Below the pieces are notes generated by a model. That model had not been told where the DNA came from, did no database searches, and worked only from the letters and a program-made list of their open reading frames with translations. Below are positions 15,913 through 26,653 of a stretch of 64,000 nucleotides of DNA, piece by piece; the stretch's first letter is position 1; each line of letters opens with the position of its first letter. Made by a program: the position numbers and the translations under genes. This DNA comes from Neoconidiobolus thromboides FSU 785 (taxonomy: Eukaryota; Fungi; Entomophthoromycota): assembly GCA_025603075.1 (NCBI GenBank), contig MU626270.1, forward strand, positions 143,882 to 207,881. Reading direction: 5' to 3'.

Positions 15913-18900
15913 TTAAGGTTTGGATCTCAATAAAGTAACTAAATGTTTTAAACCAGCGACCCAAGGTCCAACTTGATCAACATGAGTAGATACTAATTGA
16001 GAATGTAAGGAGATAGCATTGGCATAATCTTTTCTATCAAGGGCTATAAAGGATATCAGCATTATATATTTAATGATATGATAATATTAAAACTTACCTT
16101 TAGCAAACTCGGTTAAAGGAGATAAAATTGAAGGAGCTAAAGTATCTTGATTCATACTATCAAACAATTGATTCAATCGTTTTTCAACATCAGCAAACAT
16201 TTTCATTTGGAGTGGCGGCTATAAATTAATAAATTAATTTATACTAAATATCTTTATTAAATAGACTTACCAAAGCTAAACTTTTAAATGTAACAATATG
16301 TTTATTTAACATTTCATATAATTCCTTATATTTTGGTGGCATTTTACTTCTATCTAATGATACTACAAATTATTAATATTAAACTTAATATAATTAATAA
16401 TTAAATCACCGTTTTGTTTAGCTTGAGGTGGTGACAATACAGCTGATGATTGTTGTTGTTGTTGTTGTTGGAAAGGTTGTTGACGTGATTGTTGTTGTTG
16501 ATGGAAAGGTTGTTGTGGGTTACGTCCTGGTGCATGTCCTGGTGCATGTCCTGGTACCTGTCCTGGTTGTCCAGAAGGCACTCTTTGAGCAGGTTGAGAT
16601 GGTGGTGCAGAATGAGTTGGTTTAACTGGATTTGTTTGATATAAGGGTTTTTGTTGTGGTGGTGGTGGCATGTGGGATATAGGTTGCTGTTGTTGATTAT
16701 GTTGTTGGGGTGGTAAATGAGATGGAGGTTGCTGTGATTGATGATGTTGTGGTGGTAGGGGTGGTTGGAATCCAATGTTTTGATTTACATTAGGATTAAC
16801 GTTTTGTTCTTTATGCTGATAGAATGGTGTAGGTGCCTTTCCGCCTTTTGGTGGTGGTGGTAAGTTTTTGTTAACTCCTCCATAGGCTGGTGGTGCTGAA
16901 GTATTTTGATGGTTCGGAACAGGCATACTATTCATTGGTGACGGTGAATTAGCAAATGGATTAGTTAAAGCTGAAGCTTTGTTAGCATTGCTCTTATGTT
17001 TATTAGCAAATACTTCTGTTGGTGGATCATTCCATCCTGGTCCACCACGCTGTACTGAAGGTGGAGTAACACTTTCTTGAATTTCATTGATACTATTATT
17101 ATCATAGTTTGGATATGCGTTATTATTGAGAGTATTAGTATTAGTTGGTGGATAATTTGGATATGGGTTATATAAACTAGATATATCTGAGTTATTTGCA
17201 GTAGTATTTGTATTGTACAATGAATTGGCAGAAGTTTGACCTAAACCAGTTGGGTTATACAATTGATTAGTTGAGGTTTGATCTAATGGAGTTATATTGT
17301 ACAGCTGGTTGGTTGAACTTTGATCTAAACCAGCATTGCTATATAATTGATAGCCACCACCGTAATAAGGTTCTTGTGCAGTAGGTGGATATTGACTAGC
17401 AGTATTGCTATAGCTTGTTGCTTTTGGTTGAGTGTATTGTTGTTGAGCGACATTACTATTATTAGTACCAGTGCTGCCACCAATTTCAATATAATTAAAT
17501 GGGAAAGAGGATGGATCAAATGAACTTATATCAACGCCAGAGTAGTATAAACGATACTTAAGTGCTGAATACTCATCTAAGGAATCTTCATTTGTCTCTT
17601 TTCTATAGCTTAATGGAATCATATTGAGATACTTGGCAGCAATATCCAATAAACCTTGAGAAACTAAAAATTGAGCATACTCATAATAAAGTGAATAAAG
17701 AGTATTCAGTTTCTTATTCTTTTCAATCTCTTGCTCATTTTCGGCACTTGCAAAGTTGACTGCTTTAATATATAAAGATACTTTTTCAACTAATTCTTGT
17801 AAAATGTTACTATCATAAAACATCTGGTTTGAAGGTGATGGTTGTTCACCATTCAATTGACTATTTGGATAAACATTATTTTGCTTAGAAAGATAATCAG
17901 AAACCCAAATAGTAACTACTTTTTCAATATTTCCTGATAATAAGAAACATAAAAGAGCGTTCTTTTTATGTTCACTCTTATCGGGGCTATTAGCCAATCT
18001 AATACCAAGTTTCTCGGTTAATAAACCAAACTCTTCTCCTTGGGCATAAGTACAGAGCATGGTCAATATCTTTTCCCACTCTTCTAAATCAGCATTATGT
18101 ACAACATCCTCAAGGCTACCATTGACTACACCTTCTAATAATCTTACATAGGAAGCTTCATTACGGCGTAATTTAAATATCTCATTTTTTGTTTTTTCAA
18201 GTAACTCATTACCACTAACCATGGCAATCAACAAAGCATCAGCATATTGCTGATTATTGAGACATGCTTTGACAGCCGATTTATAATCTCCTACAATAAT
18301 TAGTTTAGATAATAGTGATTGTAAATCTGAATTTGAGCCAATAATTGAAAATGGGTCTGAAATTATTTCATTCTTTTTGTCTTCGGTTTGTCCGACAATA
18401 GGTTGTTCTTGAGTTTGGTGAGTTTTATTAAAGAAATCATCTTCATGGTCACCATTATCACCAAATAGATGATTATTACTTTCTTGATTAGCTTGTTGAG
18501 TTGCTTCGGTATTTTCTAGTTCATCTGGCTGTGCTGTTTCTTCAGTAGTCTCTTTTATTTCTTCTTTTGGCTCATCTGCACCTTCGCTTCCCTTATCCAA
18601 GTTAAAGTTGGCTAATTCTTCATTTAGTTTTTCAATAGAAAGATCTTTATTACTAATTAACATATCAACTAATTGTTTGCGTGAATCTTGTTCAAATAAA
18701 AGCTTAATGACATCCCAACTAAGTTTGTCATCAGGTGATTGTTCTATTCTCTTGTTAATAAATTCATCAATGTTTTCTTGTTCTAAAACTTGTTTCAATT
18801 CTTCTGCTCTTTCTTTAATGACCGGTTCAGACACAATATTAGTAACGCTGATGATAGAGCCTTTTGTATTATTAAATCTAGTTAATTGACCACCAAATCC

Positions 18901-20373
18901 AAAAGAGGCACCAACTGGGCGACGGAACCATTTTGGTGGTTGTTTTAATTTTAAGGTTGAGGTAGTAGTATTGGCACTGACATTAGAATTAAAAAAATCT
19001 TCGCTATTTTCTACTTCTGTTTTTACTTTCTCTTCATCAGATGATAGTATAGAATGAATCGTAACCTTAAATAAAATTAGTTAATAAAATCAGTTAATAG
19101 ATTAATACTTACCTTTCCATCAAAAGATGAAGAAGACAGTATATTTGGATTACGTGGAGACCATTGAATATCAAAAGCCCAGTTGTTACTTTGAGGAAGC
19201 TAAAAAAATAGATTAGATAGTAAACTTACTAGTAGTTATTTATCTTACTTCTCCTAATATCTCACCATTCTTTGGGTTCCAGCAAATATTACGGTTATCT
19301 TTACCACAACTTAATAAAAGATCGGAATCCATTGGACACCATGCTAAAGATAAAACACCTTTGTTATGGCCTGAAAACACTTTCTCTGGTGCATTAGCAT
19401 TTCTAAGATCCCATAGCATAATAACAGGATTATTATCATCTTCAGAAGCAGTAACTAATTGAGTTGCCTAAAATAGAATAATGAGTAAAAGCTAAAATAA
19501 TCAACGAAATAATTTACGGAATCTGGATTCCAAGCAACAGAAGTAACGCCACCATGAGAAAAGTTTGAGTTTCCAGATTGTTGATAACCCAAAGACATAA
19601 CTTCTCTACGATTCTTTAAATCCCAAATAACTGTATAACCAGAGTTGGAGCTTGTTGCTAAAATATGGGGTACTTTTTTGTTCCAAGATAAATCAGTTAC
19701 ATCTCCAAGTTTAGAACTTTTTGGCCCAGGATTATATGGTTTAGTTAAGTCCCCTAAATTCCAAATAAAAACCTAAAGTTATTTGATTATAAACTATTAA
19801 CTTAATGAATGAAACATTATGAATTACTTCTCCATTACCACCACCAGAAGCTAATAAATTAGCTTGGAATGGATTGAACTCTAAGCCTTTGACAGCTCCA
19901 CTGTGTTTATTTTGTCTAGAGATTAAACTTGCTTCTGAGCTATAAAATAAAATAAAACAAATTAGTATAAAATTTATGACATCAGTTTTTTGATTTACCC
20001 TTCACCAGCAAGAATTTTTTCTGGGTTCCAAAAATCTATTTCTCCATTTTCCATACCACCAGCAATAATACCAAGGTTATAATCTGATTGTGGTAAAGAC
20101 CAAGTTAAGCGATTGAATCTATATTACAATGTTAAAATTAGTAATTTAAAATATCTCTATTTTTGAATACCTAGCGTTACTAGTAACCACAGCAGCGGGC
20201 TCATTTAAGTCAGTTTGTTTAGTAGCCCAGTCCAGCTTAAAAATTTCCAGTTCAGTAGTATTAGAAAAATTTTCATCTAAAGCACCAGCTACAGTACCGG
20301 TAACAATAGCTTGGCAACTTTGTATTGGACTCCATGCAATCGTTGAAGTTCTTGATATCTCTTTTAATTTCAT
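15913..20373 (-). CDS. SEC31: COPII outer coat protein Sec31 (multi-exon)
   Basis: [16 protein letters not shown]...[14 protein letters not shown]40 exons ([43 protein letters not shown]), [19 protein letters not shown], a Pro/Gln-rich region with GWNDPP, and a C-terminus [12 protein letters not shown]...[15 protein letters not shown]. Confidence 0.95.
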
Positions 20374-21527
20374 TTTACTTTTTTTATGAAGTTTAAATAG
20401 AATCTTGAAATTTGGTTGTTTATTATCCTTTGTTAGTTGGAACCCTATAAATTTTATTACGTGGAATCTGACTCTTTCATTTTTCATTGGTTCATCTATA
20501 TTGAAGTTTGAAGTTTCTTGGTTTTATTGGCTTTTTTTTTAACTTTATTTTCTAAGTTTATTTTGATTTCATTACTAAAATTCATTCAAAGGTACAGTTA
20601 AATTATTTCCAAAAACAAGTTTATTTTAAAATAAGTTAAATGAATAAAACTATATATAAAAAGCTGTATTGCTTCTGAAGTCTTAAATTTCATAATTTCA
20701 TTTAGTTCATAATAATATTAATGTTTTTAAATCTGATTACAATTCAAATATTCGGTTCATTATAATAATGAATTTTATTAAGCTAAATATCCAAAGTATT
20801 CTACATTCTTATTGAACAAAAACTTTATGCTTAAAATACATCTAAATGTTTAAGTATCTTATAACGTAAATAGAGGAGAAGTAGGTGCTTCGAAACAAAA
20901 AAGCATTTTATTATGTAAGTGGGGCTATATTTGAAATATCATAACTTCAATGTTATCAATCACTTTTTATGTTTATATTTGTATTAAATAAATTTATTCT
21001 GCAGATAAGTTTTTATAAATAATTGTAATGATACTAATGGTATTGATTGTTTCGAACATTATAGACTGATATTCAATTTATTAGAGTAAATAGCAATGTA
21101 ATAATGTACCATAAAAAATAGTGATATAAAATTAAACTTATAGATAACGACTCTTTTAGTTAAATATACTTTCGAAAATAGCAATTAATTTGATATATAG
21201 CTGCTGCAACTCTATTTGTGACCTGATTAAACTACTCATTAAAAATATTTTTTTAATAAAATTAGGCTAAAGCTAAGATTAGGTGTCAAATAAACAAATT
21301 ACAAGCTCTAGAAATTAGCGCAAGCTAGATCTCAATAGAGTTGTAGCAACTATGCTTGGTAGCATTTACCTCTAGTTAAAAATTTTAAATCATGATCCTT
21401 TTGGATTTTACCAGATCAATATAAAATTACTAATAAAATTTAGATTTGTAATCAAATCATTAAGTCACTAAGCAACCAATATATAAACAAAAACTGAACA
21501 ATAATGCTTTTATAGGTTTAAACTGAA

Positions 21528-22475
21528 ATGGAGTCATTTAACATATTAGTTCAATATAAAGGAAACTCTACATCAATACAAGTTATTTCTGATTCAACAG
21601 TAGCATACATTAAAGAGCAAATAGCTTTAGAACTTCAGCTTGAAGAGAAATATTTAAAGTTGGTATATAAAAGGGTATTAAAAGATGAAGAGAGGGTAGA
21701 TCAGACCTCATTAAAAGACGGATCAAAAGTAACATTGATAGCCACACCAATTAAAGATATATCCAATTTACAACGTGTAGAAAAGGAGTTATATTTGCGG
21801 CCAAAGGCAACGGTAGCTCCAGCAACCCCTAGAAAGCAAGTTAATTTTGAAGAGCAAAAGTTATCCAAATATACATTTCATAAACTAGAAACCTTATCAG
21901 AGTTCCCAAACCGAGAAAAGGCGTATGAGTTTTTGCTAAAATTAAAACAAGACTTAGGAGTTGTTGAAATAATGAAAAAATATCAGTGGCAAGTTGGTAG
22001 CTTGATAGAGTTATCACCTCTTAAAAAGGAGATTTTGGGCTACAATAAAAACAAAGGACAAGTTATTGCTTTGAGATTAAGGACGGATGATCTTACTGGG
22101 TTTGTCAATTATAATCAAGTTAAAAAGGTATTAATGCACGAGTTAGCTCATATGATTCACTCAGAACATGATGCTAAGTTTCATGAGCTAAATAGAACCT
22201 TAAACAAAGAAGTAATTCAATTGGACTGGACAAAAGGAAAAGGCTCTAGAACATCGAATGCAAAAACTTATAATCCTAATAACACTTACTATTCTTCGCA
22301 TACTGCAAACAAAGACGGTCATCGATTGGGTGGTAAAAAACTTGACGTTAATGAGTTTAATACTTCTTTAGAGTTTAGGAGGAATCTTATTTCTAATGCT
22401 ATAGATTTACGATTAACAAAGGAAGAAGAGGAACTAGTTGAAGCATGTGGTGGGAACTCTGAGTATTCTCAATAA
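21528..22475 (+). CDS. Ubiquitin-like + WLM metalloprotease (Wss1/Wss2-like DNA-protein crosslink protease)
   Basis: N-terminal UBL (LKLVYKRVLKDE...LKDGSKVTLI). The WLM core is ILGYNKNKGQVIALRLRTDDLTGF...VLMHELAHMIHSEHDAKFHELN, with an HExxH zinc motif. Confidence 0.9.
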   Translation: MESFNILVQYKGNSTSIQVISDSTVAYIKEQIALELQLEEKYLKLVYKRVLKDEERVDQTSLKDGSKVTLIATPIKDISNLQRVEKELYLRPKATVAPATPRKQVNFEEQKLSKYTFHKLETLSEFPNREKAYEFLLKLKQDLGVVEIMKKYQWQVGSLIELSPLKKEILGYNKNKGQVIALRLRTDDLTGFVNYNQVKKVLMHELAHMIHSEHDAKFHELNRTLNKEVIQLDWTKGKGSRTSNAKTYNPNNTYYSSHTANKDGHRLGGKKLDVNEFNTSLEFRRNLISNAIDLRLTKEEEELVEACGGNSEYSQ

Positions 22476-22544
22476 AGTTTATTGCAACTTAAACATAAAA
22501 GGGTTATCAAATATAATTTTATTAAAGTTTAAAATAATTCAATT

Positions 22545-24027
22545 TTAATTACGATAAGGGTTTGGATATACTCCTGGGCTAGGTGGGACTTGTGATGGGT
22601 ATCCAGATGATTGTGGAGGATATCCAGAAACATGGGAAGGTGTAGGTGGATAAGAAGTATGGCCATATTGAGCAGAAGCAGTAGAATTATTGCTAATAGG
22701 TGGATAACTAGATTGGTGATGTTGTTGAGGTAAACTATTCTGTGGTGGATAGGGAGCACTGGCTTGTGGGTTAGATTGAGGAGTAGACTGATGAGAAGAT
22801 GGATAATAAGACCCCTGGCCATAACCTTGCTTTGGTGGAAGTTGACCGCTACTGGGATATGGAGATTGATTTTGTCCAATAGATACTTGGTTTAGTGGAA
22901 TACTTTGTTGTACAGGTGGATAGGAATTTTGTTGATGTTGAGCTGGCTGATGTTGAGCTGATTGCTGTTGATTTAGAGGATATTGACTCTGTTGATTAGT
23001 AGAAGCGGGTGTAGAATTTTGTATGTTACTAGATATTTGAGGGCTATCAGAATAAGTTGATTGTTGCGGGATGGGAGGATAAGAGGTTTGGGGTTTTGAC
23101 AAAGATGAAGCTTCTTGAGAATTCGTGTTAGGACCTCCTGAAGTATTATTTGAAGCATTTCCCAACTTTAAAGCATTAGTTCCCTCTAAAAGTTGATCTA
23201 AATAAAATTAAGATTAATATTTTTAAGGCTCTAAAATTGTTACCCATATCAGAATTAGAAAGTGTGTTATCATGTTTTGTATTATCTTTAATAAAATAGT
23301 TAGAGACATAATTTATGATGTTATGATTTTATTTACTTTCAGATTTTACATCCTTCTTCAAAGAGTGAAATAATTGATCAAGCTTGTTATTGATATCTCT
23401 TATTTCCTGTCTAACTTCTAAAAAATCTAAAGTATTTATTTTATTATTATTTGAATAAAAGTTAGAAAGTTGAGCCGGTAATTCTGGGAATGGATTTTTT
23501 TCATGATCTAAATAAAGTTTAATGATTGTATCTATGTTATACATACTCATTACCATATACTAATATTTTAATAGTATTTGATATAGCCATTGCATGGTTG
23601 ATATCAATATCATCAGTTATTGACACTAGATCATTGTCTATCAAAATATTAATAAATCATTAACACTATACATAATTTATTCACAATTATGGAATAAATT
23701 TGAATCAAATTAATCATTACCTTCGTCGATATACTTCAACACGATATTATTAAGATTGGCAGGGAGTCTACTTCTAAACAGACGATGAACCAAAAAAAGA
23801 AGTCTAAAGCTTGTTAATACAACTTATTTTAAATCTATTATTGCTACTCATCAAAAGTGGGGACATTATGAATAGTGACTCTGCGAACTTCACCTCCACA
23901 TTTACCTATAGAAAATTTATTTTTAACAAAACATAATTGTAAATTATATATCAATACATTTAATTGAAATAGCACTATTTTGAACAGGCAACATTTGTCT
24001 AATACTTTGATATTTGTTTGCTTCCAT
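22545..24027 (-). CDS. TFG: TFG (Trk-fused gene) orthologue: PB1 domain + coiled coil + Pro/Gln/Tyr/Ser-rich tail (multi-exon)
   Basis: Splicing introns 23957-23906, 23847-23804 and 23720-23638 gives SIKCKCGGEVRRVTIHNVPTFDELLFLVHRLFRSRLPANLNNIVLKYIDEDNDLVSITDDIDINHAMAISNTIKILV. Then come the coiled coil FLEVRQEIRDINNKLDQLFHSL and a disordered P/Q tail ending PPSPGVYPNPYRN. An alternative in-frame ATG lies at 24135. Confidence 0.85.
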
Positions 24028-24498
24028 TTCGTTTAAACTTATTTTATTTGTTTCTTTTGTTTGATTCATGTTAAAAGTCATAATTGAACTTATCTTAATT
24101 TTAGCACTAAATACCTTTTCCTTTTTATTGGTCATGACGATTTATCAGTGTTTTTTAGCTTTTGTTCTAGATAAATTTTTTTCTCATTTTTAGCCTCAAC
24201 TATTTTAATATTATAGTCAAATATTATTTTAATAACACAAGTCTAATAAAATATTGAGGATTTTTTCTCTTATATTTTCAAACTGTTAATAAATAAATTT
24301 TAATACCAGCTACTAGGATAGTCTATTTTATTAACATTCTATTAATAATCACTCTATAGAAAAACAGTTATAAATAAGCACAATACAGATTATTGCGCAG
24401 TACCTATTTTGCATTAATTCTACCTTAAATGGTAAATTTTGTTAAATATCAAACTTTTAAGGATTTTACTTCTTAAATGTCAAAATAAGATTGATAAC

Positions 24499-26653
24499 AT
24501 GGAAAATAAAAAGCCAAATTTAGCGGATGTATTTGATGAAGCAATGTTGGAAGTAGAAGAAGCATTATCGTTAAGTTATTTTAACTCAAAAAAGTTTCAA
24601 CCTAAAATAGAAGTAGAGCGTTTCAAAGTAGTAGATGAGAATCACTCTCCTGAGCAAAAATTAAATAATTTACTGTCTTCGTTAAAGGATATCAATTCAG
24701 CTAGTGATAAATTGGAGCATTCAAAGATGTTATTATTTCCAAGATCGGAAGCAAGTTTAAAAAAGATAGATAACGGACATACTAAGAGTAAAAAAATATC
24801 AGGAATCCCATTTATGAACAGAATTTTAAATGATCTACACCTTCAAAAAAATAATTTGAAATTAGACTTATTAAGAGAGCATAGAAAATTATGGAATGAA
24901 ATCAAACCTGATGATAAAGATCATCTTAAGTTTAATGAATCCATTTTAACTTACCCATTAACCTCTAAACTGAGTGGACAGGAAGTTAATTATTCTTTAT
25001 TTGATGCATTTAAGCAGGAGGATAATGGAAAAAGAGGTAGTTTATCAGAATACGCGTTGAGGGTAAGCTTAAGAGTAATTACAGTTTTAGTATGATATTT
25101 ACGTGATATTCAATAGTTTTTCCCAAAAAGATATAAAGTTAAAAGCTTGGCTGATTTTAATGTACCAGTAATTACTAACAGGTAATAATTTACAGTTTAA
25201 CATTTTAAAGCCACTTTATTTATTTTTATCAATGGCAGTGATAATGCTAACATAAAGCCTATGAATAACAAACAACAGGGAAGGACGAGTAGCACACCAA
25301 AGGTAATTTTAATAACAACTAAAAAGTTTATTATTAATTATTAAGATTTCTAAGAAATATGATTCTGATGAAGCAGAATCAGGAAGGAATGGTGCTACAG
25401 AGTTTAAAACCGCAAAACAGTTACTAGTAAGTTGATTTTACTTATTTAATGATCAGTGTATTTATTATTGCTAAGCAAATGAATTCCAAAAAGAAATCAA
25501 CTTCAGATTTGAACTCTCGTTCAAATAATAGAAATCATGGCTACAACAACAACAAACCATTTGTAAATCCAGCAAAAAAGAGAGATACCGATGAAGAGGA
25601 CGAATTTGAAGAGATTAGAAAAGAATATAGGTAAGCTTTACTTGAACTGTTATAAGAGTATATTTAACTATTTATAGTTCATACAATTTAGATTCGAGTA
25701 AAAAGAAAAAGAAGACAATTAACTTAGATGACAAAGATGAAGAAGTTGATCCACGATTAAAAAATGTAGAGCCACAAATGGTTGAAAGGATTATGAATGA
25801 AATTATGAGCCATAACTTAAAGTTGGACTGGGACGATATTGCAGGATTGGATCATGCCAAAAATTTAATTAAAGAGATTGTTGTATGGCCAATGCTAAGA
25901 CCAGATATATTTAAAGGACTTTTGGGTCCACCCAAAGGCCTTTTACTATTCGGACCACCAGGCACAGGTAAAACGTTGATAGGTAAATGTATTGCTAGTC
26001 AAAGTAACGCAACCTTTTTTTCTATCTCTTCGTCATCGTTAACATCAAAATGGATTGGCGATGGAGAAAAGATGGTACGGGCACTATTTGCTGTAGCAAG
26101 ATGCCATCAACCCTCAGTTATATTTGTAGATGAAATTGATTCTTTATTGACACAAAGAACGGATGGTGAAGTAGAAGCAACAAGGCGTATCAAAACAGAA
26201 TTTTTGGTTCAACTAGATGGTTGTGCCACTTCAGAAGATGATAGGGTATTGGTTATTGGAGCTACTAATCGACCACAAGAAATTGATGAAGCAGCACGAC
26301 GAAGGTTTCGAAAACGAGTGTATATTCCATTGCCAGAACAAAACGGTAGAAGGAAAATTATAGAAAATTTATTGAAAAAGAATTTAGCCCATGGTCTTAC
26401 GGATGAGGAAATTGATCATGTAGCAAAACTTACACAGGGTTATTCTGGATCGGATATGGATGGCTTATGTCGTGAAGCTGCTCTTGGACCTATTCGTAGT
26501 ATTGCTTGTATTGCTACTGCCAAGCTGGATGAAGTTCGACCAATGGAACTAAATGATTTTTTATTGGCTTTAAAGCAAGTAAGAGCTTCTGTAGATCCTA
26601 AAGAATTAGATTTTTATATTGAGTGGAATGAAAAATTTGGCTCACTAAATTAA
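24499..26653 (+). CDS. FIGNL1: Fidgetin-like 1 AAA+ ATPase (multi-exon)
   Basis: [85 protein letters not shown] and [13 protein letters not shown]. Upstream exons carry EFKTAKQL and KPFVNP. Confidence 0.9.

What the first reader, a model, noticed from the sequence alone, without database searches (positions are those of the whole stretch)
22545..24027. A fungal TFG orthologue hidden by introns, 2 kb from SEC31
The ORF track shows only a P/Q-rich fragment. Splicing three phase-compatible introns gives a PB1 domain (KCKCGGEVRRVTIHN..TFDELLFLVHRLFR..IVLKYIDEDNDLVSI..DINHAMAISNTIKI) that parallels human TFG as I recall it (KAQLGEDIRRIPIHN..TYDELVLMMQRVFR..TIKYKDEDGDLITI..DLSFAIQCSRILKL). It is followed by a TFG-type coiled coil and a low-complexity P/Q/Y/S tail ending PNPYRN, echoing PNPYARN in the human Sec23-binding tail. 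TFG organises ER exit sites and COPII carriers by oligomerisation and phase separation, is absent from model yeasts, and is usually described as metazoan. An orthologue here would imply an ancestral opisthokont ER-ERGIC organiser lost in Dikarya.
Basis: partly seen in the sequence, partly recalled or inferred. Interest (0 to 1): 0.78.

Follow-up and report, generated by a model that had tools for sequence, protein, structure and literature searches.

The report
TFG-like ER-export scaffold gene in a fungus
This intron-rich gene of the insect-associated fungus Neoconidiobolus thromboides encodes a protein built like animal TFG, the scaffold that organises ER exit sites, so TFG is probably not confined to animals, although its function and wider fungal distribution were not tested here.

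Summary
On the minus strand, 24027..22545, lies a seven-exon gene with six short GT..AG introns. Its translation equals the public protein KAI9298127.1, "hypothetical protein" of Neoconidiobolus thromboides FSU 785 (Entomophthoromycotina), 386 aa.

Residues 20-95 match Pfam PB1 (E 2.3e-12). Among all solved structures, human TFG's PB1 domain is by far the closest (E 1.3e-11, 47.8 bits). The next PB1, Cdc24, scores 16.8 bits. The residues shown to hold the human TFG ring together all have equivalents here.

A heptad helix follows (residues 124-158), then 216 residues rich in S, Q, P and Y. Entomophthora muscae has an orthologue that shares all six intron positions and also matches TFG best.

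Not supported:
- The "PNPYRN" end is not kept in E. muscae.
- Neither tail has a PPP motif.
- The SEC31 neighbourhood is not shared.

Ancestry in the opisthokont ancestor and loss in Dikarya were not tested; gene transfer from an insect host is an open rival.

No paper on a fungal TFG was found. The scan had noted this same stretch in an overlapping window (s1-255215), not on other DNA.

Verdict: a new member of a known kind, of moderate interest.

The parts
23958..24027 (-). Exon 1 (70 nt): annotated start ATG at 24027, N-terminal 19 residues and the first PB1 strand up to the conserved Lys23. In-frame upstream ATGs at 24135, 24081 and 24069 leave the true start open.
   Evidence: join equals P0001
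23848..23905 (-). Exon 2 (58 nt): PB1 strands 1-2 with the V30-R31-R32 motif. Same length as exon 2 in E. muscae.
   Evidence: alignment to 9e7c_A
23721..23803 (-). Exon 3 (83 nt): PB1 helix 1 and the start of the acidic OPCA motif (Y67-I68-D69-E70). Same length as in E. muscae.
23554..23637 (-). Exon 4 (84 nt): rest of the OPCA motif (D71, D73, D79), helix 2 and the last strand of PB1. Same length as in E. muscae.
   Evidence: (exon alone: PB1 E 0.082)
23337..23507 (-). Exon 5 (171 nt): 25-residue linker, then the heptad helix (a/d positions F127, V130, I134, I137, L141, L144, L148).
   Evidence: helix 124-158, pLDDT about 80; this exon retrieved P0001 at 100% identity; heptad read from the sequence
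23244..23285 (-). Exon 6, a 42-nt micro-exon (14 residues). Its TLS.S..D motif is kept in the 45-nt micro-exon of E. muscae.
22545..23197 (-). Exon 7 (653 nt including stop TAA 22547-22545): 216-residue low-complexity tail (S 19%, Q 17%, P 17%, N 9%, Y 7%), nine YP[PS] motifs, almost no charge, ending ...PNPYRN.
   Evidence: no Pfam family
23506..23970 (-). Span that encodes the PB1 domain (residues 20-99), interrupted by introns 1-3 and closed by intron 4.
   Evidence: Pfam PB1 E 2.3e-12; TFG PB1 E 1.3e-11; AF2 beta-grasp fold at pLDDT about 87; Foldseek PB1 hits

Best explanation
This is the Neoconidiobolus thromboides member of the TFG family (human gene name: trafficking from ER to Golgi regulator). 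It is most likely an orthologue of animal TFG.

Shown here:
- A seven-exon gene encodes a 386-aa protein with no domain other than PB1.
- The N-terminal PB1 domain is specifically TFG-like. It carries both the basic face (Lys23, Arg31) and the acidic OPCA face (Asp69, Asp71, Asp73, Asp79).
- A heptad helix follows, then a roughly 216-residue S/Q/P/Y-rich tail with almost no charged residues.

Inferred:
- As in human TFG, front-to-back PB1 contacts plus the coiled coil assemble ring-like homo-oligomers.
- The low-complexity tails drive condensation of these rings.
- The assembly sits at ER exit sites, where it concentrates or tethers COPII carriers.

Whether the tail binds Sec23 is open.
For: Gene model:
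- The join of seven GT..AG-bounded exons equals KAI9298127.1 exactly.
- The E. muscae orthologue (53% identity over the aligned N-terminal region, 43% over the whole alignment, 74% in PB1) has the same six intron positions and phases. Exons 2-4 have identical lengths of 58, 83 and 84 nt.

Family:
- Pfam PB1 E 2.3e-12.
- Against all PDB sequences the best hit is human TFG PB1, 9e7c_A, at E 1.3e-11 and 47.8 bits. The next best is Cdc24 at 16.8 bits, then NBR1 and Par6 at about 14.5.
- The two-species profile gives 52.3 against 16.6 bits. E. muscae alone gives 47.3 against 18.7 bits.
- The ESM Atlas puts 'Protein TFG' first by features for both proteins (0.92 and 0.91). For E. muscae, 'protein TFG-like' and 'Trafficking from ER to golgi regulator' come next. 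'Protein TFG' is also first by shape.

Mechanism:
- bioRxiv 10.1101/2024.11.05.621662 shows that K14, I21, R22, D60/D62 and D70 make the human ring interface.
- In the alignment these align to K23, V30, R31, D69/D71 and D79 here, and all are also invariant in E. muscae.
- The AF2 model has a PB1 fold at pLDDT about 87 and a helix at 124-158. Superposition on 9e7c gives rmsd 1.3 A at 38% identity.

Architecture: the layout parallels the human one described in PMC12009431 (folded 1-123, then a mostly disordered Q-rich remainder).
Against: - No reciprocal search and no PB1 phylogeny could be run. The word-index searches did not reach any animal TFG.
- Foldseek ranks many PB1 structures above 9e7c, so the fold alone does not discriminate. 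The paper describes a strand swap in that crystal.
- The linker between PB1 and the helix is about 25 residues, longer than I recall for human TFG.
- Neither fungal tail has a PPP motif, and the C-terminal ...PNPYRN is not kept in E. muscae.
- Function rests entirely on analogy.
Confidence: 0.78

Rival explanations
1. The protein is TFG-derived in sequence but works differently. It would be a PB1-coiled-coil-prion-like scaffold that forms condensates for another process, such as selective autophagy or stress granules in the manner of p62/NBR1, without binding COPII.
For: Neither tail has a PPP motif, and the C-terminal residues differ between the two fungi. The SEC31 neighbourhood is not conserved. 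Q/N/S/Y-rich tails are common in condensate proteins of many kinds.
Against: Every residue tested for the TFG ring interface is kept. No UBA, ZZ or LIR-bearing domain is found. An earlier unchecked note (s1-063488) reports a separate p62/NBR1-like PB1-UBA gene elsewhere in this genome.
Confidence: 0.12
2. The gene is truly a TFG but is not ancestral in fungi. It would have been acquired by an ancestor of the Entomophthoromycotina from an animal, probably an insect host, and then gained fungal introns.
For: The only two fungal relatives recovered belong to insect-associated Entomophthoromycotina. TFG is otherwise discussed only for animals in the papers I could read.
Against: PB1 identity to human TFG is only about 36-38%, which does not suggest a recent transfer. 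Six introns are shared by two distant genera. Base composition and intron style match the host genome (28% GC). The searches here could not have detected more distant fungal relatives, so the narrow range may be an artefact.
Confidence: 0.07
3. The protein is not a TFG relative at all. It would be another PB1 family whose likeness to TFG is convergent or due to chance, or the gene model would be a prediction artefact.
For: PB1 domains are short and share the OPCA motif. Orthology was judged from one solved TFG structure and from language-model neighbours.
Against: There is a margin of about 29-36 bits over every other solved PB1 domain in three independent queries. The whole architecture is shared. 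The frame is kept across six introns in two species.
Confidence: 0.03

Closest known systems
Human TFG (trafficking from ER to Golgi regulator; PB1 structure PDB 9E7C) and C. elegans TFG-1
   Same: N-terminal type I/II PB1 domain with Lys on strand 1 plus an OPCA acidic motif. About 36-38% identity over 71-81 aligned columns, and all tested ring-interface residues have equivalents. A coiled coil follows directly downstream, then a long disordered Q/P-rich tail. Total size is about 390-400 aa and there is no other domain.
   Different: The linker between PB1 and the coiled coil is longer, about 25 residues. The tail is richer in S, N and Y, with repeated YPP motifs. It has no PPP motif and almost no charged residues, so the net-acidic IDR1 and net-basic IDR3 segments described for human TFG are not evident. 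The host is a fungus, and function is untested.
Entomophthora muscae hypothetical protein DSO57_1019858 (P0007)
   Same: Orthologue: 74% identity in PB1, identical intron positions and phases, and the same PB1-helix-micro-exon-P/Y-rich tail layout. It also matches TFG best.
   Different: It is 311 aa with a much shorter tail (126 residues) that is P/T/S/Y-rich rather than Q-rich, and it ends differently (...PGPHYT). It has a longer N-terminal extension, and no SEC31 lies within 10 kb.
p62/SQSTM1 and NBR1 PB1 scaffolds
   Same: PB1 fold; head-to-tail PB1 polymerisation that drives condensates (Foldseek hits).
   Different: Sequence scores are about 30 bits lower than to TFG. There is no ZZ, FW or UBA domain.
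Fungal polarity PB1 proteins Cdc24 and Bem1
   Same: PB1 fold; Cdc24 is the second-best sequence hit (E 0.048).
   Different: Those are single-faced PB1 domains placed at the C-terminus of multidomain proteins (GEF-PH, or SH3-PX). Here the PB1 is N-terminal, two-faced and the only domain.

Membership tests
TFG family | PB1 domain of the TFG subtype, closer to TFG than to any other PB1 subfamily | tested here: met
   Against PDB sequences: TFG 47.8 bits against 16.8 or less for Cdc24, NBR1 and Par6, with other PB1 domains not reported at E<=10. Two-species profile: 52.3 against 16.6. E. muscae: 47.3 against 18.7. Atlas first hit is 'Protein TFG'. The dedicated CDD cd06401 and PANTHER models were not available.
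TFG family | Two-faced (type I/II) PB1: a basic Lys on strand 1 plus an acidic OPCA motif, allowing front-to-back homo-oligomers | tested here: met
   In the alignment, K23, V30, R31, D69, D71 and D79 align to human K14, I21, R22, D60, D62 and D70. One search shows those human residues form the ring interface. All are invariant in E. muscae.
TFG family | Coiled coil immediately after the PB1 domain | tested here: met
   AF2 helix 124-158 at pLDDT about 80, with a clean a/d heptad from 127 to 148 read from the sequence. The linker is about 25 residues. Residue-level likeness to the human coiled coil, including an Arg at the position I recall as R106, rests on memory of the human sequence and was not tested.
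TFG family | Long C-terminal disordered P/Q-rich region making up most of the protein, with no further domain | tested here: met
   216 residues, S+Q+P = 52%, 4 K/R and 3 D/E. Pfam finds only PB1. The Atlas model of the whole protein has mean pLDDT 0.50.
TFG family | C-terminal segment that binds Sec23 | tested here: inconclusive
   PMC11321049 says the human carboxyl terminus binds Sec23. The fungal tails have no PPP, and the last residues are not conserved between the two fungi. The PNPYRN/PNPYARN likeness rests on a recalled human sequence. No complex modelling tool was available.
TFG family | Orthology by reciprocal best hit and by phylogeny | not tested
They returned only P0001 and P0007. 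No TFG or outgroup PB1 sequences could be fetched by reference.
TFG family | Octameric ring assembly, condensate formation and ER exit site localisation | not testable with these tools
   These need biochemistry and imaging.
p62/NBR1 autophagy receptors | PB1 plus ZZ and UBA domains (and FW in NBR1) | tested here: not met
   Pfam reports only PB1. NBR1 PB1 scores E 0.24, and p62 is not reported at E<=10.

The most novel reading that the evidence does not exclude
TFG arose before animals. A PB1-ring plus condensate-tail organiser of ER exit sites would have been present in the opisthokont ancestor, survived in Entomophthoromycotina (and perhaps other early-diverging fungi), and been lost in Dikarya. 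The idea that TFG co-evolved with the animal ERGIC would then need revising, and TFG could be studied in a fungus.
Probability: 0.45. Interest if true: 0.62.

Novelty: new member of a known kind. Interest (0 to 1): 0.5.

Why it matters
In the papers I could read, TFG is treated as part of the animal COPII machinery. Its mutations cause hereditary spastic paraplegia and related neuropathies.

A true fungal orthologue would move the origin of this scaffold back to at least the fungus-animal ancestor, unless it was transferred. It would separate TFG from animal-only features such as large-cargo export. It would also show which features are old: the ring-interface residues are kept, whereas the tail sequence is free to drift.

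The two fungal proteins are labelled only 'hypothetical' or 'uncharacterized' in public records. Automatic family databases that I could not query (CDD, PANTHER, OrthoDB) may already group them with TFG, which would lower the novelty.

Tried and rejected
- Exon-by-exon Pfam scan gave only a weak PB1 hit for exon 4 (E 0.082). Exon-by-exon PDB searches found nothing, because the pieces are too short.
- A word-index search with the tail exon found nothing. The public protein, at 386 aa, falls just outside the length range allowed for a 216-aa query.
- Word-index searches with P0001 residues 1-160 and P0007 residues 38-180 found only these two proteins, so no animal TFG sequence was obtained by reference.
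- The other five hits of the exhaustive search with exon 5 (P0002-P0006) are mostly repeat proteins matched in several stretches, three of them with LRR-like repeats. I discarded them as unrelated.
- My first six-exon model lacked the micro-exon. It was replaced by the seven-exon model supported by the public protein and by E. muscae.
- The weak Pfam EzrA hit (E 0.002, below the cut-off) reflects coiled-coil composition only.
- The metagenome scan with the two-species alignment gave no confirmed relative.
- A synteny test of SEC31, WLM and FIGNL1 against the E. muscae locus gave no hit, so I treat the SEC31 adjacency as coincidence.
- Papers PMC5604033, PMC4369316 and PMC6166410 are not held. 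A text search for the recalled human C-terminal peptide found nothing.
- I joined the exons only inside scripts, to translate them and to check identity with the fetched public protein. All database work used exon references or the ids P0001 and P0007.

Full report
**What is in the sequence**

The ORF list for 21500-25000 shows one sizeable minus-strand ORF, 22545..23165 (206 aa, P/Q/S/Y-rich). Reading the minus strand and joining GT..AG-bounded pieces in a script gave one frame from ATG 24027 to TAA 22545.

My first model had six exons. A search of the 1.84-billion-protein library with exon 5 alone, given by reference, returned P0001 (386 aa, 100% identical over the exon). P0001 is KAI9298127.1, 'hypothetical protein K502DRAFT_35555' of Neoconidiobolus thromboides FSU 785. 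That settles the organism: an Entomophthoromycotina (Zoopagomycota) fungus. The window's 27.7% GC fits a very AT-rich genome.

P0001 differs from my first model only by a 14-residue insert encoded by a 42-nt micro-exon (23285-23244). With it, seven exons translate letter for letter to P0001:

| Exon | Coordinates (minus strand) |
|---|---|
| 1 | 24027-23958 |
| 2 | 23905-23848 |
| 3 | 23803-23721 |
| 4 | 23637-23554 |
| 5 | 23507-23337 |
| 6 | 23285-23244 |
| 7 | 23197-22545 |

The six introns are 52, 44, 83, 46, 51 and 46 nt, and all are GT..AG. In-frame ATGs also lie upstream at 24135, 24081 and 24069, so the start codon is not settled.

**Support for the gene model from a second species**

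The word-index search with residues 1-160 of P0001 found one relative, P0007 from Entomophthora muscae. It is 311 aa, 53% identical over the aligned N-terminal region and 74% within PB1.

I fetched its locus (L001) and solved its exon structure so that the translation reproduces P0007 exactly. There is one solution: seven exons of 133, 58, 83, 84, 153, 45 and 380 nt, with intron phases 1, 2, 1, 1, 1, 1. N. thromboides has exons of 70, 58, 83, 84, 171, 42 and 653 nt with the same phases.

Exons 2-4 are identical in length, and the micro-exon exists in both species with a shared TLS.S..D motif. Six shared intron positions in two genera argue strongly that the model is right and the two genes are orthologous.

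**What the protein is**

Pfam finds one domain in P0001, PB1 at residues 20-95 (E 2.3e-12, 47.1 bits against a cut-off of 23.6). P0007 gives the same result.

The key question is which kind of PB1 this is. The table shows the best and second-best scores against all distinct PDB chain sequences.

| Query | TFG PB1 (9e7c_A) | Next best PB1 |
|---|---|---|
| P0001 residues 1-160 | 47.8 bits, E 1.3e-11 | Cdc24, 16.8 bits, E 0.048 |
| Two-species profile | 52.3 bits | Cdc24, 16.6 bits |
| E. muscae alone | 47.3 bits | Par6, 18.7 bits |

NBR1 and Par6 scored about 14.5 bits. The p62, aPKC, MEK5, Bem1 and phox PB1 domains did not reach E 10.

The ESM Atlas language-model neighbours agree. 'Protein TFG' is first for both proteins (0.92 with 196 shared features, and 0.91 with 187). 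For E. muscae, 'protein TFG-like' (arthropods) and 'Trafficking from ER to golgi regulator' (chordates) come next. 'Protein TFG' is also the first row of the shape search.

An AlphaFold2 model of residues 1-185 has a beta-grasp PB1 fold at pLDDT about 87 and a long helix at 124-158 at about 80. Foldseek returns PB1 domains throughout. It does not rank 9e7c first (rank 41). The paper describing that crystal reports a strand swap, which may be why only 71 columns align. Even so, 9e7c has the highest identity (38%) and shares the lowest rmsd (1.3 A) in the listed hits. Fold therefore says 'PB1', and sequence says 'TFG-type PB1'.

**Mechanistic residues**

The preprint that reports 9E7C (10.1101/2024.11.05.621662) shows that human TFG's PB1 is a type I/II domain. 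K14 on strand 1 meets the OPCA motif (D60, D62) of the next protomer, and I21, R22 and D70 are also needed for octamers. K47 is not needed. The downstream coiled coil contributes to oligomerisation (R106C).

In the alignment the fungal equivalents are K23, V30, R31, D69, D71 and D79. All of them are invariant in E. muscae. So both faces needed for front-to-back self-assembly are present.

Downstream, residues 127-148 form a clean a/d heptad (F, V, I, I, L, L, L), which I read directly from the sequence. From my memory of the human sequence, this helix aligns with the human coiled coil and has an Arg (R131) at the R106 position. I could not fetch a full-length TFG, so that point is a lead and not a result.

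**Tail**

The last 216 residues are 19% S, 17% Q, 17% P, 9% N and 7% Y. They contain nine YP[PS] motifs and only seven charged residues. This parallels the human layout described in PMC12009431: folded 1-123, then about 73% disorder with a Gln-rich tract.

The human carboxyl terminus binds Sec23 (PMC11321049), at the interface shared with Sec31 and TANGO1 (PMC6096569). It is weakened by two facts: the E. muscae protein ends differently (...PGPHYT), and neither fungal tail has a PPP motif. The neighbouring SEC31 does have PPPP runs. Sec23 binding is therefore open.

**Surroundings**

- The 3' neighbour is an intronless ubiquitin-like plus WLM (Wss1-type) protease gene at 21528-22475 (+). It is convergent with this gene, with only 69 nt between the two stop codons.
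- Beyond it lies SEC31 at 16363 to about 20373 (-). Its exon fragments look like WD40 repeats by eye (not scanned), and it has an ACE1/TPR_Sec16 region and a Pro-rich tail. The stated 2 kb distance is right.
- Upstream, diverging from this gene, is an AAA ATPase gene that earlier notes call FIGNL1.
- None of SEC31, WLM or the AAA gene is found within 10 kb of the E. muscae orthologue. I read the SEC31 adjacency as coincidence.

**Comparison with what is known, and novelty**

By layout and by the tests available, the gene belongs with TFG; the membership table gives each feature. Two tests are missing: a reciprocal search and a PB1 tree.

The papers I could read treat TFG as an animal ER-exit-site component (C. 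elegans and mammals, absent in flies). Five literature searches found nothing on a fungal TFG. Public records call both fungal proteins hypothetical or uncharacterised. Automatic family databases that I could not query may already group them with TFG.

The evolutionary inference (ancestral in opisthokonts, lost in Dikarya) is untested. Only two Entomophthoromycotina were recovered, both insect-associated, and my searches could not have seen distant fungal relatives. Ancient transfer from an animal host therefore remains a rival. It is disfavoured by the low identity to animal TFG, the host-like composition and the six shared introns.

If that is true, this gene is not the NBR1 orthologue.

I sent no self-joined protein to any search tool. 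Joining was done only inside scripts, to translate and to test identity with the fetched public protein. All later work used the ids P0001 and P0007.

**Verdict**

Identity as a TFG-family protein is well supported (about 0.8). The ER-exit-site and Sec23 function and the deep-ancestry claim are plausible but untested. This is a new member of a known kind, of moderate interest.

Noticed in passing
window 21528-22475 (+): Intronless 315-aa gene with an N-terminal ubiquitin-like domain (E 6.9e-07) and a WLM metalloprotease domain (E 8.7e-43), i.e. Wss1/SPRTN-type. Its stop lies only 69 nt from the stop of the convergent TFG-like gene, so the 3' UTRs probably overlap.
   Followed up: partly
window 16363 to about 20373 (-): SEC31 gene. 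Exon fragments around 19240-19598 and 20146-20373 look like WD40 repeats by eye (not scanned). A large last ORF carries the ACE1/TPR_Sec16 region (E 2.8e-08) and a very long P/Q/N-rich tail with PPPP runs. Its tail composition resembles that of the TFG-like protein.
   Followed up: partly
window 24069, 24081, 24135 (-): Three in-frame ATGs lie upstream of the annotated start at 24027 in the same open frame. They would add 14, 18 or 36 residues. The E. muscae protein has a 21-residue longer N-terminus that is not obviously similar.
   Followed up: partly
L001 10001-11809: The E. muscae orthologue has five very short introns (35-39 nt) and one of 685 nt at the position of N. thromboides intron 3. 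One donor is GTTAGC.
   Followed up: partly
window 24439-26653 (+): Diverging from the TFG-like gene is a gene with an AAA ATPase C-terminal ORF (25778-26653, Walker A GPPGTGKT). Earlier notes call it FIGNL1. Only about 470 nt separate the two starts, so they may share a bidirectional promoter region.
   Followed up: no
P0002, P0003, P0005: The 56-aa coiled-coil exon drew weak hits (E 4.5e-07 to 3.6e-04) to proteins with LRR-like 'LTSLPELP' repeats, through its 'PELPAQL..N.L' stretch. I took this as chance likeness.
   Followed up: no
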